From Selaginella moellendorffii (lineage: Eukaryota > Plantae > Lycopodiophyta), in assembly GCF_000143415.4 (NCBI RefSeq), contig NW_003314448.1, forward strand, positions 21,231 through 85,230: a DNA stretch of 64,000 nucleotides, written 5' to 3'. The notes below the pieces were generated by a model. It had not been told where the DNA came from. It searched no databases and saw nothing but the letters and a program-made list of their open reading frames with translations. Below are positions 1 to 9,535 of the stretch, piece after piece. A program made the translations under genes and the position numbers. Numbering within the stretch: position 1 is the stretch's first letter; the number at the start of each line of letters is the position of its first letter.

Positions 1-56
1 GAGCCAAAATATAAGTAGAGCTGGCGCCGAGCTAGGGTTAGGGTAGACACTAGACG

Positions 57-108
57 ACTACACCCGGCTGATGAGTCCCAAAAAGGACGAAACCGGTCTC
101 GGGTTGTC
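57..108 (+). ncRNA. Type I hammerhead ribozyme (minimal, PLE-associated)
   Basis: CCCGG(63-67)-CUGAUGA(68-74)-GUCC-CAAAAA-GGAC(75-88, helix II)-GAAA(89-92)-C-CG-GUC(96-98)-UCGGG(99-103, pairs with 63-67). Full catalytic core; predicted cleavage after C98; helix III is the short palindrome ACCGGU. Confidence 0.93.
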
Positions 109-135
109 TTTTGTCCTCTCCCTCGCTCACGAATG

Positions 136-1953
136 AATGAAAATTCATTCCCTTGCCTCCTCTACTTGCTCTCGATCATGCCGTCTCGACAACGGCACAC
201 GGAGAATGTGGATTGCACAAAGTGGTGCCGCAATCTCGCCGGATTGCAGCAAAAGCCCTAAGTTGTTTGAGGAGAGAGCTCGAAGGCGCTAGAGAGAGAG
301 TGTGAGAAAGAGGGAGGGAGCGAGCGTCCAGGGCGGCACAAGCATCGCAGACCGCGGCAGCAACACATGGAGCTCGTCTCCCTCCTCTTTCTCCTCTTTT
401 CTCTCGCTCTCTGTCGTTTTTATCGATATCTCCCAAACGGCTGGGAGAAACCTCGATTCCTTCGACAGGGGGCTTCTAGGAGTGTAGATTCTCATCCTCC
501 TAGAAGGCCGCGGCGAGATCTGCCACGGATCTGGAGATCTCGCTGGCCCTAGGTCGCTGCTGTTTTTAGGGTTCTTCGGCGGCGGCTAGGGTTTTTCGGG
601 GCTTAGAGATTTGGAGGAGTGGAGAGGACAGCTAGGAACACCACGGCTGCAGCAGCTGGACGCTCTCCTCTCCTCCTCTTCTTTTTTCGCTTCTCATGGT
701 TTCAAGGTTTTTGGGAGCTCATAACTCCTGAACGGCTTGGAATTTTTCCACAAAAATTCACAGGGGGATAGCTGGGAGGGAGCCTCACACCCTCCCAGAA
801 GCGCAGGCAAAAATTCTTCACGGTCTCAGAGTTCTCACCTGCCCTAATTCGTGGCTAGGGTTAGGGTTCTTGGCTGGCTTTTGCCCTAACTACGGTTAGG
901 GCAGGACTTAGGGTGGCAGTGGGATCTCCGATCTGGCCACTCTAAGTGTCAGGGATCTTCGTTGCATGTGGTTGGCACGGCAGCAACATGGTGGAAACGC
1001 GACGGTTGCTGGTCTCGCAGCTTCGAGTGGGATTTCTCGCCTTAGGTCGGGCCATGCAAGGTGGTGACTGAGGTACGGAGAGCGTGAAGCTGCATGTGTC
1101 GGAAGTTCTTGGCGACTTGAGTCGTGGAAACACGACCAAGTCATGGGAACTTTGTTGACTGGTGGAGAACAGTTCGGGACGACATCCCGACATAGCGAAG
1201 TGTCCGCGGTGGATGGACGTGGAAGACACTATGGGCGCATTTTTGGATCTAGTGACAGGGAAGTGCTGTCACAAAGGGGGCCAGTGGCGGATGGCCGAGT
1301 TGGTTTGCTCGCGGAGGGGATCCCACATGGTTCTTGCTTCAGGGCTAGTCCTTTGAGGAGGTTCGCGGAGGCTTGCAAGTCTTGTGATTGTCGCGATGCC
1401 GGCAACGGGGGCTCGTATATCATTGAAGGGGGCCAGCGCACTTGTCTAGTGTGGGAGGCAAGGTAGCACGCTCTAGTCTAGAGCTGGAGGAGGCTCACAC
1501 CTCGCTTGTTCTACGCCTTGGAGTTTGTTCGCAATGGGCACCGACTTAGTGCTGGAAGTACACTGGGGAGCTTGTGCAGTGGAGTCACCTTGGAGGCGAG
1601 TGACCCATGAGCAACGCCGGGTCATCGTGCTCAAGTTGGACCGCTTGGCTGCGACGACGTCGAGCTAGATCGACATGGTGTTTGTCTGGCTTGTCATCAT
1701 TGTGACCGAGTGGAGGAGTGGCAAGGCGAAGCAGGTGGCTTCAAGCTCCGCGGTGGAGTCACCTGGGAGGTGGACGGCCCAAGAGCAGCGCCGGGCGTTC
1801 GCGCTCATAGTTTCACTAGTTTCTTCGAGAGTGCGCTCTCAATGTTGTTTTGATCCCTTTGGGATTGGGGTAATGTACATATATGTTTAGCAATCTCGCC
1901 GGATTGCAACACCACGGGGTGTCTTTGACCCTAAACGCCTAAACGCGCCTAAA
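136..1953 (+). mobile_element. Distal copy of the 3' non-coding region of the telomeric Penelope-like element
   Basis: Near-identical direct repeat of 7586-9402 (offset ~7450; the small ORFs in both copies translate almost identically). Ends in the same GTCTTTGA-CCCTAAA-CGCCTAAA-CGCGCCTAAA terminus. Confidence 0.85.
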
Positions 1954-2095
1954 CTCTAAACCTAAACCCTAAACCCTAAACCCTAAACGCGCCTAAACCC
2001 TAAACCCTAAACCCTAAACCTAAACCCTAAACCCTAAACCCGTAAACCCTAACCCCTAAACCCTAAACCCTAAACCTAAACCCTAAACCCTAAAA
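1929..2095 (+). repeat. Plant-type telomeric repeat tract (CCCTAAA)n with variants
   Basis: About 20 CCCTAAA/CCTAAA units read directly. Confidence 0.97.
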
Positions 2096-7208: not shown

Positions 7209-7227
7209 GCTACCTTGGACTTGCCCA

Positions 7228-7550
7228 AAGCTACCTCTTGCAAACTCAGAGTGGAATATTCCTGGAATATTCTGATGCTTTGAAATATTTTTTGAGGTTA
7301 GCTATTAAACATGATGAGGAACAATTAGGACGTGCTGCATGGCTGATATCCATCACCATCACCGTTCACAATATACTGCTATGAATAAGCTACCTCTTGC
7401 AAAGTCGGAGTGGAATATTCCTGGAATATTCTGATGCTTTGAAATAATTTTTGAGGTTGGCTATTAAACATGATAAGGAACAATTAGGACGTGCTGCATG
7501 GCTGATATCCATCACCATCACCGTTCACAATATACTGCTATGAATAAGCT
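7228..7550 (+). repeat. 159-bp tandem duplication in the 3' UTR of the PLE
   Basis: AAGCTACCTCTTGCAAA... starts at 7228 and again at 7387; few substitutions. Confidence 0.92.
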
Positions 7551-9377
7551 TCACACCACTAAGCTTGTTTATTTCCTGACCACTAAATGAAAATTCACTC
7601 CCTCGCCTCCTCTACTTGCTCTCGATCACGCCGTTTCGACAACGGCACACGGAGAATGTGGATTGCACAAAGTGGTGCCGCGATCTCGCCGGATTGCAAA
7701 AAAGCCCTAAGTTGTTTGAGGAGAGAGCTCGAAGGCGCTAGAGAGAGAGTGTGAGAAAGAGGGAGGGAGCGAGCGTCCAGGGCGGCACAAGCATCGCAGA
7801 CCGCGGCAGCAACACACGGAGCTCGTCTCCCTCCTCTTTCTCCTCTTTTCTCTCGCTCTCTGTCGTTTTTATCGATATCTCCCAAACGGCTGGGAGAAAC
7901 CTCGATTCCTTCGACGGGGGGCTTCTAGGAGTGTAGATTCTCATCCTCCTAGAAGGCCGCGGCGAGATCTGCCACGGATCTGGAGATCTCGCTGGCCCTA
8001 GGTCGCTGCTGTTTTTAGGGTTCTTCGGCGGCGGCTAGGGTTTTTCGGGGCTTAGAGATTTGGAGGAGTGGAGAGGACAGCTAGGAACACCACGGCTGCA
8101 GCAGCTGGACGCTCTCCTCTCCTCCTCTTCTTTTTTCGCTTCTCATGGTTTCAAGTTTTTTGGGAGCTCATAACTCCTGAACGGCTTGGAATTTTTCCAC
8201 AAAAATTCACAGGGGGATAGCTGGGAGGGAGCCTCACACCCTCCCAGAAGCGCAGGCAAAAATTCTTCACGGTCTCAGAGTTCTCACCTGCCCTAATTCG
8301 TGGCTAGGGTTAGGGTTCTTGGCTGGCTTTTGCCCTAACTACGGTTAGGGCAGGACTTAGGGTGGCAGTGGGATCTCCGATCTGGCCACTCTAAGTGTCA
8401 GGGATCTTCGTTGCATGTGGTTGGCACGGCAGCAACATGGTGGAAACGCGACGGTTGCTGGTCTCGCAGCTTCGAGTGGGATTTCTCGCCTTAGGTCGGG
8501 CCATGCAAGGTGGTGACTGAGGTACGGAGAGCGTGAAGCTGCATGTGTCGGAAGTTCTTGGCGACTTGAGTCGTGGAAACACGACCAAGTCATGGGAACT
8601 TTGTTGACTGGTGGAGAACAGTTCGGGACGACATCCCGACATAGCGAAGTGTCCGCGGTGGATGGACGTGGAAGACACTATGGGCGCATTTTTGGATCTA
8701 GTGACAGGGAAGTGCTGTCACAAAGGGGGCCAGTGGCGGATGGCCGAGTTGGTTTGCTCGCGGAGGGGATCCCACATGGTTCTTGCTTCAGGGCTAGTCC
8801 TTTGAGGAGGTTCGCGGAGGCTTGCAAGTCTTGTGATTGTCGCGATGCCGGCAACGGGGGCTCGTATATCATTGAAGGGGGCCAGCGCACTTGTCTAGTG
8901 TGGGAGGCAAGGTAGCACGCTCTAGTCTAGAGCTGGAGGAGGCTCACACCTCGCTTGTTCTACGCCTTGGAGTTTGTTCGCAATGGGCACCGACTTAGTG
9001 CTGGAAGTACACTGGGGAGCTTGTGCAGTGGAGTCACCTTGGAGGCGAGTGACCCATGAGCAACGCCGGGTCATCGTGCTCAAGTTGGACCGCTTGGCTG
9101 CGACGACGTCGAGCTAGATCGACATGGTGTTCGTCTGGCTTGTCATCATTGTGACCGAGTGGAGGAGTGGCAAGGCGAAGCAGGTGGCTTCAAGCTCCGC
9201 GGTGGAGTCACCTGGGAGGTGGACGGCCCAAGAGCAGCGCCGGGCGTTCGCGCTCATAGTTTCACTAGTTTCTTCGAGAGTGCGCTCTCAATGTTGTTTT
9301 GATCCCTTTGGGATTGGGGTAATGTACATATATGTTTAGCGATCTCGCCGGATTGCAGCACCGCGGGGTGTCTTTGA

Positions 9378-9535
9378 CCCTAAACGCCTAAACGCGCCTA
9401 AACCCTAAACCCTAAACCCTAAACCCTCCCTAAACCCTACACCGGACCCTAAACCTTAAACCCTAAAACCTAAACCCTAAAACCTAAAACCTAAACCCTA
9501 AAACCTAAAACCTAAACTGGTAAACCCTAAACCCT
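9378..9535 (+). repeat. Proximal, more degenerate telomeric tract (former chromosome end)
   Basis: CCCTAAA/CCTAAAA units with several variants; abuts a truncated gypsy RT. Confidence 0.95.

What the first reader, a model, noticed from the sequence alone, without database searches (positions are those of the whole stretch)
1..9535. A telomere-building retroelement chain: endonuclease-less Penelope-like element alternating with telomere tracts
Seen: an intact ORF1+RT unit with no endonuclease, three copies of the same 3' terminus (ending 1953, 2153, 9402), each running into CCCTAAA repeats on the sense strand, and the two proximal copies capped at their 5' ends by further repeats. Established: EN-less PLEs (Athena/Coprina, Terminons) are telomerase relatives thought to prime on the exposed G-rich telomere strand; the class has been reported in Selaginella, so the class itself is not new. 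Inference: the window records at least three successive terminal additions (full element, 57-nt stub, distal copy) alternating with telomerase extension. Near-identity of the copies and intact ORFs suggest a recently active system working alongside telomerase.
Basis: partly seen in the sequence, partly recalled or inferred. Interest (0 to 1): 0.92.

Follow-up and report, generated by a model that had tools for sequence, protein, structure and literature searches.

The report
Telomere-attached retroelement chain in Selaginella
This is a real chain of endonuclease-free Penelope-like (Coprina-type) retroelements alternating with telomere repeats in the spikemoss Selaginella moellendorffii, best explained by repeated copying of element RNA onto a chromosome end; this element class and its telomere habit were already described in this species, so it is a well-preserved example, not a discovery.

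Summary
The window is S. moellendorffii scaffold GL377752.1. Positions 2181-9402 hold a full-length two-ORF element whose reverse transcriptase (RT) is Penelope-like and has no GIY-YIG endonuclease. Its 3' terminus recurs at 1953, 2153 and 9402, and as a mini-stub at 1985-1997. Each copy runs into CCCTAAA repeats on the sense strand.

- A type I hammerhead ribozyme lies at 62-104.
- The distal copy belongs to a different, non-autonomous family.
- The full element's 3' tail is chimeric and lacks the ribozyme.
- ORF2 is probably reached by a conserved -1 frameshift (G_GGA_AAC at 4908 plus a stem-loop).
- The chain continues at least 10.7 kb upstream of the window. There it is telomere-capped again and interrupted by a young nested gypsy element.

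Two other scaffolds end in long (CCCTAAA)n tracts followed by the same kind of chain in the same polarity. The three family-A RT copies differ with dN/dS about 0.3. The terminal-addition interpretation is therefore well supported.

Coprina Sm1/Sm2 elements, their telomere association and their hammerheads are already published for this species. Novelty: already known. Interest is moderate.

The parts
1..1953 (+). 3' part of the distal unit. It is a non-autonomous 'B-type' Coprina relative whose body continues upstream of the window.
   Evidence: L001/L008 upstream sequence. The RT C-terminal remnant (aa 386-616, 56-58% identical to the family-A RT) lies at L008 1668-2201 and 9725-9886. The same unit in L002 is 97-99% identical.
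62..104 (+). Type I hammerhead ribozyme (core CUGAUGA...GAAAC...GUC; predicted cleavage after C98).
   Evidence: Rfam RF00163, 40.5 bits (gathering score 34), E=7.8e-7. The Rfam hits in L002, L003 and L009 have the same score; by my reading of the printed sequences a 54-nt core is identical between families A and B. No hammerhead elsewhere in 1-10000 even at E<=1.
230..247 (+). Hairpin GCAATCUCGCCGGAUUGC, first copy in the distal tail. In canonical elements this hairpin sits immediately before the 3' terminus.
   Evidence: Four copies in the window against 0 expected. Folds as a 7-bp stem, z=-2.5. Conserved in all 3' modules.
249..1889 (+). 1.64-kb 'C-type' segment lying between two copies of the hairpin. 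It is absent from canonical B and A 3' ends. No coding signal and origin unknown.
   Evidence: In L002 and L009, window 1-248 joins directly to window 1890-1953. No match elsewhere except unit 0 of the same chain. The 107-aa ORF has no Pfam hit.
1890..1953 (+). 3' module of the distal unit: hairpin (1890-1907), spacer, and degenerate reverse-complement telomere repeats (GACCCTAAACGCCTAAACGCGCCTAAA).
   Evidence: Alignment of ten 3' ends; motif search.
1954..2096 (+). Telomere tract (CCCTAAA)n containing a mini-stub (AAACGCGCCTAAA at 1985-1997) that copies only the last 13-18 nt of the element terminus.
   Evidence: TRF. The same CGCG-marked mini-stub occurs in tracts at L008 ~623 and L009 ~5180.
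2097..2153 (+). 57-nt stub: the 3' terminus only, starting inside the hairpin loop.
   Evidence: A stub in L003 (8004-8075) starts at the same point of the hairpin.
2154..2180 (+). Short telomere tract capping the 5' end of the full element.
2181..9402 (+). Full-length family-A element (7.2 kb): 5' UTR with a 94-nt duplication, ORF1, RT ORF, 2 x 159-nt repeat, and a chimeric tail.
   Evidence: The body from 4874/4882 to 7577 is 98.4-99.0% identical to 5'-truncated copies in L003 and L002.
2656..5364 (+). ORF1 (902 aa): P/S/T-rich N-terminal half with 4 perfect 42-nt repeats, a long-helix central domain, and a basic C-terminus.
   Evidence: AF2 predicts long helices at low confidence (pLDDT 50). 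The only relatives found by context are ORF1s of two other S. moellendorffii Coprina families, 31-37% aa identity.
4908..4960 (+). Candidate -1 frameshift signal: slippery G_GGA_AAC (4908-4914) in ORF1 phase, a 9-nt spacer, and a stem-loop at 4924-4960.
   Evidence: The heptamer is in phase. CAGGGAAAC is invariant across families A, D and E while ORF1 is only 31-37% identical. The ORF2 frame opens 18 nt (A) or 3 nt (D) upstream of it. The stem is kept, with one compensatory change and several wobble changes.
4890..7208 (+). RT reading frame (-1 relative to ORF1). The conserved domain runs from FWLPL at 5349. It carries the DKN motif and the YIDD catalytic box and has no GIY-YIG.
   Evidence: The first in-frame ATG (5466) lies downstream of invariant residues H30/N31.
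7081..7095 (+). Internal CCCTAAACCCTAAAC inside the RT ORF. It encodes the conserved L-N-P-K.
   Evidence: In L002 the terminal-most unit is truncated exactly at this motif and merges with the 363-bp terminal tract.
7228..7550 (+). Two copies of a 159-nt repeat in the family-A 3' UTR.
   Evidence: Also present in L002 and L003.
7577..7587 (+). Chimeric junction. Family-A sequence ends here and the B/C-type tail begins, at B position ~125-134, downstream of where the ribozyme would lie.
   Evidence: Identity to L002 and L003 stops at 7577. Identity to window 134 onward starts at ~7587. Canonical A copies continue with ~500 nt, their own hammerhead, and ~160 nt.
7587..9402 (+). Tail of the full element: second copy of the hairpin (7680-7697), the C-type segment, the hairpin (9339-9356) and the terminus. 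It has no hammerhead.
   Evidence: 99.3% identical to 134-1953. No hammerhead.
9403..9536 (+). Proximal and most degenerate telomere tract (78% matches).
9535..9828 (+). Internal fragment of a Ty3/gypsy RT (with a stop codon) directly abutting the proximal tract. It marks the old chromosome break or end onto which the first tract was added.
   Evidence: RVT_1, E=1.8e-15, profile positions 134-205 only. No LTR end at the junction.

Best explanation
The region is a fossil, or still subterminal, chromosome-end chain built by endonuclease-deficient Penelope-like elements of the Coprina type.

Shown by the sequence:
- Each unit's sense strand ends in a hairpin followed by degenerate C-strand telomere repeats (...GACCCTAAACGCCTAAACGCGCCTAAAC) and then runs into (CCCTAAA)n.
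- Each 5' end, whether full-length or truncated, is capped by another (CCCTAAA)n tract.
- All tracts have one polarity, which places the chromosome end to the left of the window.
- The innermost tract abuts a broken gypsy RT.

Inferred mechanism:
1. The C-rich 3' end of the element RNA pairs with the TTTAGGG 3' overhang.
2. The element's RT, made as an ORF1-RT fusion by -1 frameshifting at G_GGA_AAC, extends the overhang using the RNA as template.
3. The complementary strand is filled in.
4. Telomerase re-caps the new end.
5. The cycle repeats.

Early termination of reverse transcription gives the 13-85-nt stubs. Template switching, or local recombination, gave the full element a foreign, ribozyme-less tail.

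The order of events in the window, from oldest to youngest, is:
1. Broken gypsy healed by telomerase (9403-9536).
2. Full family-A element.
3. 57-nt stub.
4. Mini-stub.
5. Non-autonomous B-type unit.

Further units were added upstream of the window. A gypsy element later inserted into the B unit.
For: Species and locus.

RT type:
- Homologues with E down to 1e-149 are all EN-less. EN+ PLEs match at about 30% identity.
- The window RT sits in a 100%-supported clade of 28 EN-less sequences, separate from the GIY-YIG clade.
- The DKN motif and YIDD box are invariant.
- The six best structural matches are all TERT.
- No endonuclease.

Polarity and caps.

Hammerhead.

Independent terminal chains:
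- L002 starts with (CCCTAAA)51 at the scaffold end and then holds seven units or stubs.
- L009 starts with (CCCTAAA)34, followed by a full-length family-D element and two truncated units.
- The three family-A copies have three different proximal flanks, so they are independent sites.

Age gradient of the tracts: 97% matches at the L002 terminus, 83-89% for the two tracts between units in the window, and 78% for the innermost.

Purifying selection on the RT: dN/dS 0.31-0.35, p=0.0015.

Frameshift signal conserved in three families.

The distal unit is capped, and the gypsy is nested with a 5-bp TSD (CTGCC) and identical LTRs.

Published model for EN- PLEs: PMC6431247, PMC8557442, PMC13159263.
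Against: - In this assembly the chain is not at a scaffold end. At least 10.7 kb of further chain lies upstream, and another 10.2 kb was not visible to me.
- The two 1.8-kb tails in the window share a rare 1.64-kb segment and a 53-nt deletion relative to the third tail upstream. This fits local copying, gene conversion or a shared local template as well as independent additions.
- The full element lacks the hammerhead that the published model places next to the priming repeats, so this copy may be a dead end.
- Hairpin and frameshift stem energies are not significant on their own (z -0.9 to -2.5).
- Nothing here shows priming, ribozyme cleavage, frameshifting or transcription directly.
- The tracts between units could in part be copied from read-through RNA and not made by telomerase.
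Confidence: 0.85

Rival explanations
1. The units did not all arrive by separate terminal retrotransposition. Part of the chain, especially the second copy of the 1.8-kb tail on the full element, arose by unequal recombination, gene conversion or break-induced replication between neighbouring units or telomere tracts.
For: The tails at 134-1953 and 7587-9402 are 99.3% identical. They share a 53-nt deletion and a 1.64-kb segment not seen in L002, L003 or L009. The family-A body switches abruptly to this tail at 7577-7587. The short scaffold L003 has redundant ends.
Against: Stubs of 13, 57, about 40 and 85 nt, each bounded by telomere repeats, are hard to make by recombination. The units have different bodies and different truncation points. 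The three family-A copies have unrelated proximal flanks. This rival concerns single steps and does not replace the terminal-addition model.
Confidence: 0.25
2. The elements integrated into pre-existing interstitial telomere-like repeats or at internal double-strand breaks, so the chain was never at a chromosome end.
For: The chain lies 10-31 kb inside a 103-kb scaffold. Decayed PLE fragments exist at internal positions (L004, L010).
Against: Two sister chains sit at scaffold ends under long pure telomere tracts with the predicted polarity. All tracts in the window have one orientation. The innermost tract abuts an internal point of a gypsy RT, as expected for a healed break. The internal fragments carry no telomere repeats and are 10% or more diverged.
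Confidence: 0.07
3. The tandem arrangement is an artefact of a two-haplotype Sanger assembly.
For: The assembly is old and fragmented (103-kb and 13-kb scaffolds). Near-identical repeats 7.4 kb apart are a classic source of misjoins.
Against: No N gaps occur in 1-10200. The two tails differ at 13 positions spread along their length. The same architecture appears on four scaffolds.
Confidence: 0.03

Closest known systems
Coprina (EN-deficient Penelope-like elements), including RepBase Coprina Sm1/Sm2 of S. moellendorffii (Gladyshev & Arkhipova 2007, as cited in PMC12477314, PMC13159263, PMC8557442)
   Same: Same species. RT without GIY-YIG, DKN motif, hammerhead near the 3' end, short reverse-complement telomere repeats at the 3' end, telomere-capped 5' truncations, and location at chromosome ends.
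   Different: I could not obtain the Sm1/Sm2 sequences or read the 2007 paper, so I cannot say which of families A, B/D and E corresponds to Sm1 or Sm2. PMC13159263 states that Coprina typically has one ORF. Here there are two ORFs joined by a -1 frameshift signal. The full copy in the window has a chimeric tail without a ribozyme.
Coprina-1_Alen of Ascochyta lentis (PMC13159263, 2026)
   Same: Two ORFs (coiled-coil ORF1; ORF2 with DKN, RT and thumb). Sits at the very ends of 13 chromosomes with telomere repeats on both sides.
   Different: A fungal element with TTAGGG-type telomeres. Units there are mostly single copies per end. Chains with stubs and non-autonomous relatives are not described in the passages I read.
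Athena / Terminons of bdelloid rotifers (PMC6431247)
   Same: EN-less PLE RT. The 3' end is a hammerhead followed by reverse-complement telomere repeats. Copies are 5'-truncated and capped by telomere repeats. Long head-to-tail chains occur, with foreign sequence captured between units. ORF1 can be joined to the RT by a frameshift (PMC8557442, Fig. 1 legend).
   Different: Terminons can exceed 40 kb and carry accessory ORFs. The unit here is 7.2 kb with no accessory genes. In Terminons the telomere repeats lie immediately downstream of the ribozyme. Here they lie 158-190 nt downstream in canonical copies and 1.85 kb downstream in the window's distal unit.
Telomerase (TERT plus RNA template)
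   Same: The RT's best structural matches are TERT. It extends the G-rich 3' end from an RNA template that contains C-strand repeats. Very short templated additions (13-57 nt) occur between canonical repeats.
   Different: The template is the element's own mRNA and not a dedicated small RNA. There is no TEN/TRBD domain evidence and no repeat-addition processivity is shown.
Drosophila HeT-A / TART / TAHRE
   Same: Head-to-tail terminal arrays made by copying element RNA onto the chromosome end. Non-autonomous partners use the RT of another family.
   Different: Those are non-LTR (LINE-clade) elements that replace telomerase. Here the RT is of the PLE clade and canonical telomere repeats persist between units.

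Membership tests
EN-deficient Penelope-like elements (Coprina/Athena) | RT of the PLE clade (related to EN+ PLE RTs and to TERT) | tested here: met
   EN+ PLE proteins align over ~400-675 aa at 28-36% identity, E 1e-63 to 1e-68. Tree placement. The top six Foldseek PDB hits are TERT. No curated Athena, Coprina or TERT reference sequences were available, so the subclade (Coprina) rests on the literature.
EN-deficient Penelope-like elements (Coprina/Athena) | Conserved DK(G/N) motif upstream of the core RT, and N-terminal motifs | tested here: met
   PADKNLG, with D154, K155, N156 and G158 invariant in 9 sequences. The N-terminal HNLS...LGL block is conserved. PMC13159263 calls the Coprina form 'DKN'.
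EN-deficient Penelope-like elements (Coprina/Athena) | No GIY-YIG endonuclease | tested here: met
   The RT ORF stops at 7208 and no EN-like match occurs in any frame of 1-12000.
EN-deficient Penelope-like elements (Coprina/Athena) | Hammerhead ribozyme motif near the 3' end | tested here: inconclusive
   Met for the distal unit (62-104) and for canonical family-A, B and D copies elsewhere. Not met for the window's full-length copy.
EN-deficient Penelope-like elements (Coprina/Athena) | 3' end carries short reverse-complement telomere repeats and is joined to telomere tracts in one orientation; 5' truncations are capped by telomere repeats | tested here: met
EN-deficient Penelope-like elements (Coprina/Athena) | Location at chromosome termini | tested here: inconclusive
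   Met for L002 and L009, which are scaffold ends with 363-bp and 241-bp terminal tracts. The window's chain lies 10-31 kb inside its scaffold, and the first 10.2 kb were not visible.
EN-deficient Penelope-like elements (Coprina/Athena) | RT primes on the G-rich overhang | not testable with these tools
   This needs biochemistry.
Terminons | Giant units (tens of kb) with accessory ORFs | tested here: not met
   The unit is 7.2 kb with two ORFs only.
Plant retrozymes | Non-autonomous unit flanked by two hammerhead-bearing repeats that gives circular RNA | tested here: not met
   There is one hammerhead per unit, units are linear, and each has a telomeric 3' end.
Telomere-specific LINEs (SART/TRAS, HeT-A/TART) | RT of the non-LTR (LINE) clade, with or without an AP endonuclease | tested here: not met
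   All homologues listed carry the PLE-RT Pfam families and none was identified as a LINE. R2 and LINE-1 rank below TERT in the structural search.

The most novel reading that the evidence does not exclude
The element RT may behave partly like a second telomerase. Besides full retrotranspositions, it may repeatedly add very short templated pieces (13-85 nt) copied from the extreme 3' end of element RNA. These pieces would be bounded by a conserved hairpin acting like a template boundary, leaving CGCG-marked variant repeats scattered through otherwise canonical telomere tracts at several chromosome ends.

In addition, the family-A RT may mobilise foreign 3' modules (B/C-type tails) in trans by template switching. 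The window's chimeric copy would then be a direct record of such an event.

If so, S. moellendorffii would preserve a living intermediate between retrotransposition and telomerase-style repeat addition.
Probability: 0.25. Interest if true: 0.7.

Novelty: already known. Interest (0 to 1): 0.4.

Why it matters
EN-less Penelope-like elements are the closest retroelement relatives of telomerase, and plants with such elements are rare. This locus and its sister loci give a clean, annotated plant example:
- an intact two-ORF autonomous element;
- non-autonomous relatives;
- abortive stubs;
- a conserved frameshift signal;
- two chains sitting under real terminal telomere tracts.

That material could be used for in vitro priming, ribozyme and frameshift assays. 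It does not change the current picture, because the class, its telomere association and its hammerheads were already published for this species.

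Tried and rejected
- PDB sequence search with the RT found nothing at E<=1. Only the structural search worked.
- Pfam on ORF1 gave only sub-threshold helical matches (Sey1_3HB, CIS_TMP). I treat these as coiled-coil noise.
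- The word-index search for ORF1 found only a chimeric gene model. The exhaustive search found eight weak-to-strong relatives. The three whose source I checked are from S. moellendorffii.
- The origin of the 1.64-kb C-type segment was not found. There is no Pfam hit, and no match in the rest of the window or in other loci apart from the same chain.
- Weak miRNA-like Rfam hits at 304-393 and 7753-7842 (MIR156, 31 bits against a gathering score of 62) were rejected as a GA/CT-rich hairpin.
- A second slippery site (G_GGU_UUU at 4968) and a hairpin over the ORF1 stop codon were considered. G_GGA_AAC is preferred because it is invariant in three families and coincides with the opening of the RT frame.
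- I tested whether the chimeric junction coincides with the ribozyme cleavage site. It does not, being about 25-35 nt downstream.
- Gladyshev & Arkhipova 2007 and Arkhipova et al. 2017 are not held in the library, so their content is cited only through later papers.
- Cryptomeria DNA could not be fetched.
- No Rfam hammerhead was found in the Closterium arrays.
- The first 10.2 kb of the scaffold could not be reached, because no gene is called there.

Full report
**Identity of the window.** The annotated 580-aa RT protein of the window is found on Selaginella moellendorffii GCA_000143415.2, scaffold GL377752.1 (103,126 bp). Window position 1 corresponds to record position 21,231. The scaffold continues 21 kb to the left of the window, and I could read 10.99 kb of that (loci L001 and L008).

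**Checking the observation.**
- ORF1 spans 2656-5364 (902 aa). The RT frame is uninterrupted from 4890 to 7208.
- Pfam sees only RVT_1.
- Twelve GIY-YIG-bearing PLE proteins match the window over their RT parts only (E 1e-63 to 1e-68). Their endonuclease parts match nothing in 1-12000.
- The 3' terminus signature AAACGCGCCTAAA ends at 1953, 2153 and 9402, as stated, and also at 1997. That is four hits against none in shuffles.
- The tails 134-1953 and 7587-9402 are 99.3% identical.
- CCCTAAACCCTAAA occurs 28 times, always on the + strand and only between 1960 and 9509, against 0 expected. No G-strand repeat occurs anywhere in the window.

1. A canonical type I hammerhead ribozyme lies at 62-104 (Rfam RF00163, 40.5 bits). 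It is the only one in 1-10000, even at E<=1.
2. Upstream of position 134 the distal copy is unrelated to the full element. It belongs to a second family, here called B. The body of B keeps only the C-terminal 230 aa of a different RT, 56-58% identical to the family-A RT.
3. In canonical copies elsewhere, window 1-248 joins directly to window 1890-1953. The order is ribozyme, about 130 nt, a hairpin (GCAAUCUCGCCGGAUUGC), a spacer, and then degenerate telomere repeats.
4. In both tails of the window, a 1.64-kb segment of unknown origin (249-1889 and 7699-9338) sits between two copies of that hairpin.
5. The full element, family A, is identical in body to the two other family-A copies up to 7577. 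It then switches to this B/C-type tail downstream of the ribozyme position. Canonical A copies instead continue with about 500 nt, their own hammerhead, about 160 nt, and then the telomere tract. The full element is therefore a chimera that lacks the ribozyme.
6. The tract 1954-2096 contains a mini-stub (1985-1997) that copies only the last 13-18 nt of the terminus. The same CGCG-marked mini-stub occurs in tracts at two other places.

**Expression of the RT.**
- The conserved N-terminus of the RT (FWLPL...HNLS) lies upstream of the first in-frame ATG.
- The RT frame is -1 relative to ORF1 and is open for 157 codons upstream of the conserved part.
- It opens 18 nt before a G_GGA_AAC heptamer that is in ORF1 phase.
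- In two other S. moellendorffii families, D (L009) and E (L010), ORF1 is only 31-37% identical at the protein level. Even so, CAGGGAAAC is invariant.
- In family D the RT frame opens 3 nt before the heptamer.
- A stem-loop 9 nt downstream is kept, with one compensatory and several wobble changes.

I infer a -1 frameshift that gives an ORF1-RT fusion. This agrees with the frameshift-plus-pseudoknot drawn for EN- PLEs in PMC8557442 (Fig. 1 legend). The missing ATG is therefore not a defect.

**What kind of RT.**
- The closest homologues (42-47% identity) are endonuclease-less proteins of Cryptomeria, Ginkgo and unnamed assemblies. Closterium follows. GIY-YIG-bearing PLEs match at about 30% identity.
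- In a maximum-likelihood tree, the window RT sits in a fully supported clade of 28 EN-less sequences. The 12 EN+ proteins lie together in a separate, well-supported clade of 20.
- The DKN motif and the YIDD box are invariant.
- An AlphaFold model (pLDDT 75) finds TERT structures as its six best PDB matches, followed by R2 and LINE-1.

**Surroundings of the chain.**
- On the right, the innermost and most degenerate tract (9403-9536) abuts an internal point of a Ty3/gypsy RT with no LTR end. This is what a broken chromosome healed by telomerase would look like.
- On the left, the distal B unit is interrupted by a complete gypsy element (L008 2201-9730). Its LTRs are 1147 bp and 100% identical, its ends are TG...CA, and it has a 5-bp target duplication, CTGCC.
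- Beyond that gypsy the B unit continues to its truncated 5' end at L008 663.
- That 5' end is capped by a telomere tract carrying another mini-stub.
- Before that tract lies the 3' end of yet another unit, with the same C-type tail (98.3% identical, plus 53 nt).

The chain on this scaffold is at least 20.5 kb long. It holds at least four long units, one 57-nt stub and two mini-stubs.

**Related loci in the same genome.**
- L002 is the end of the 658-kb scaffold GL377664.1. It starts with (CCCTAAA)51. It then holds a B unit truncated exactly at the RT-internal CCCTAAACCCTAAAC, a long B unit, a 290-nt C-type tail, stubs of 85, about 40 and about 40 nt, and a 5'-truncated family-A copy. The stubs and the family-A copy are separated by telomere tracts, while the first two B units abut with a single repeat between them; all share one polarity.
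- L009 is the end of the 396-kb scaffold GL377694.1. It starts with (CCCTAAA)34. Next come a full-length family-D element (ORF1, RT 65% identical to A, hammerhead, hairpin, terminus) and two truncated units.
- L003 is a 13-kb scaffold. It holds a stub that starts at the same point of the hairpin as the window's stub, followed by a truncated family-A copy.
- The three family-A copies have unrelated proximal flanks.
- Two interstitial PLE fragments were found (L004, L010). Both are decayed and carry no telomere repeats.

**Recency.** The three family-A RT copies have no stop codons. They differ by 15-28 substitutions, with dN/dS of 0.31-0.35. That is significantly fewer non-synonymous changes than neutral expectation (p=0.0015 and 0.007). 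Most of their divergence therefore arose in replicating lineages. Tract purity falls from the terminus inward: 97% at the L002 end, then 83-89% for the two tracts between units and 78% for the innermost in the window.

**Mechanism.**
- *Shown:* the architecture, polarity, RT type, absence of an endonuclease, ribozyme, hairpin, C-rich terminus, stubs, and terminal position of the sister chains.
- *Inferred:* pairing of the RNA 3' end with the G-overhang, extension by the ORF1-RT fusion, re-capping by telomerase, abortive synthesis giving stubs, and template switching (or recombination) giving the chimeric tail.
- The canonical 271-nt 3' module is strongly structured (-95.5 kcal/mol, z=-4.8). 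In that fold, a G-rich CUAGGGUUAGGG just 5' of the ribozyme pairs with the C-rich 3' end. That pairing is a prediction only.
- The role of ribozyme cleavage remains unclear.

**Comparison with what is known.** EN-deficient PLEs at telomeres were reported for S. moellendorffii by Gladyshev & Arkhipova (2007). I could not read that paper. It is cited for this point in PMC12477314, PMC4209133 and PMC13159263. RepBase holds Coprina Sm1 and Sm2 (PMC13159263). Canonical type I hammerheads in the S. moellendorffii PLEs were shown in PMC4209133. The model of a 3' ribozyme plus reverse-complement telomere repeats, 5' truncations capped by telomere repeats, and long chains is described in PMC6431247 and PMC8557442. 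The finding is therefore an instance of an already known system.

Several details may not be in print. I could not verify this:
- the two-ORF layout with a conserved frameshift signal in a plant Coprina;
- the non-autonomous B family;
- the C-type tail;
- the ribozyme-less chimera;
- the recurrent hairpin-bounded stubs and mini-stubs.

**Verdict.** Novelty: already known. Interest: 0.4.

Noticed in passing
L008 2201-9730 (upstream of the window; record GL377752.1 12439-19968): Complete Ty3/gypsy element on the minus strand, nested in the distal PLE unit. Its two 1147-bp LTRs are 100% identical, its ends are TG...CA, and it has a 5-bp TSD (CTGCC). This is a very recent insertion into the chain. 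The LTR contains a TCGGAC/TCGGTC-type satellite that also appears at window 11066-11713.
   Followed up: yes
L007 10001-18815 and L005/L006 (Closterium sp. NIES-65, contigs CANXME010000928.1 and CANXME010000970.1): EN-less PLE relatives (39% identical RT) form head-to-tail arrays of ~6.02-kb units with no telomere repeats between them. On contig CANXME010000928.1 (L007) the last unit's 3' end runs into about 2.9 kb of (CCCTAAA)n, followed by a ~40-bp satellite. No Rfam hammerhead was found.
   Followed up: partly
Cryptomeria japonica contig carrying P0003 (no DNA available): Three identical-length (626 aa) EN-less PLE RT genes lie head to tail with a ~4.33-kb period. This suggests similar arrays in a conifer. 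The window RT's closest named relatives are from Cryptomeria and Ginkgo.
   Followed up: no
L003 7686-7982: A ~300-nt fragment of an LTR-retrotransposon RT/RNase H region is sandwiched between telomere motifs inside a PLE chain. It looks as if a foreign RNA was copied onto the chromosome end.
   Followed up: no
window 32-46 and L002 8385-8655: A G-strand-like motif (CTAGGGTTAGGGTAG) lies just 5' of the hammerhead. In the minimum-energy fold of the canonical 3' module (z=-4.8) it pairs with the C-rich 3' terminus. It might mask or mimic the overhang-binding site.
   Followed up: partly
window 7081-7095; L002 350-363: The RT's conserved L-N-P-K is encoded by a perfect CCCTAAACCCTAAAC. The terminal-most unit at the L002 chromosome end is truncated exactly there and merges with the 363-bp telomere tract.
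   Followed up: partly
window 3254-3425: Four perfect 42-nt tandem repeats lie inside ORF1 (14-aa unit VPTPLPRTLPPQTS). This indicates a very recent in-frame expansion.
   Followed up: no
window 304-393 and 7753-7842 (minus strand): A long GA/CT-rich inverted repeat in the C-type tail gives a weak sub-threshold Rfam match to MIR156 (31 bits against a gathering score of 62). This is probably chance.
   Followed up: no
L004 19732-20667 and L010 7857-9629: Interstitial, decayed PLE fragments (ORF1 plus part of the RT; ~90% nt identity in L004, 31-51% aa identity in L010). They lie 250-400 kb inside large scaffolds and carry no telomere repeats.
   Followed up: partly
L003 1-1500 versus 11389-12900: The 13-kb scaffold GL377862.1 begins and ends with the same sequence. 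It starts 2 nt before the hammerhead cleavage site. This may be a tandem duplication or assembly redundancy.
   Followed up: no
window 55436-56617: An ORF with a cytochrome P450 domain (Pfam E=1.3e-31). This is the first clear host gene, about 46 kb proximal to the chain.
   Followed up: no
window 62068-62268 and L004 13699-13901: The same ~57-58-bp tandem repeat occurs in opposite orientation at two unrelated loci. It is presumably part of a dispersed repeat.
   Followed up: no
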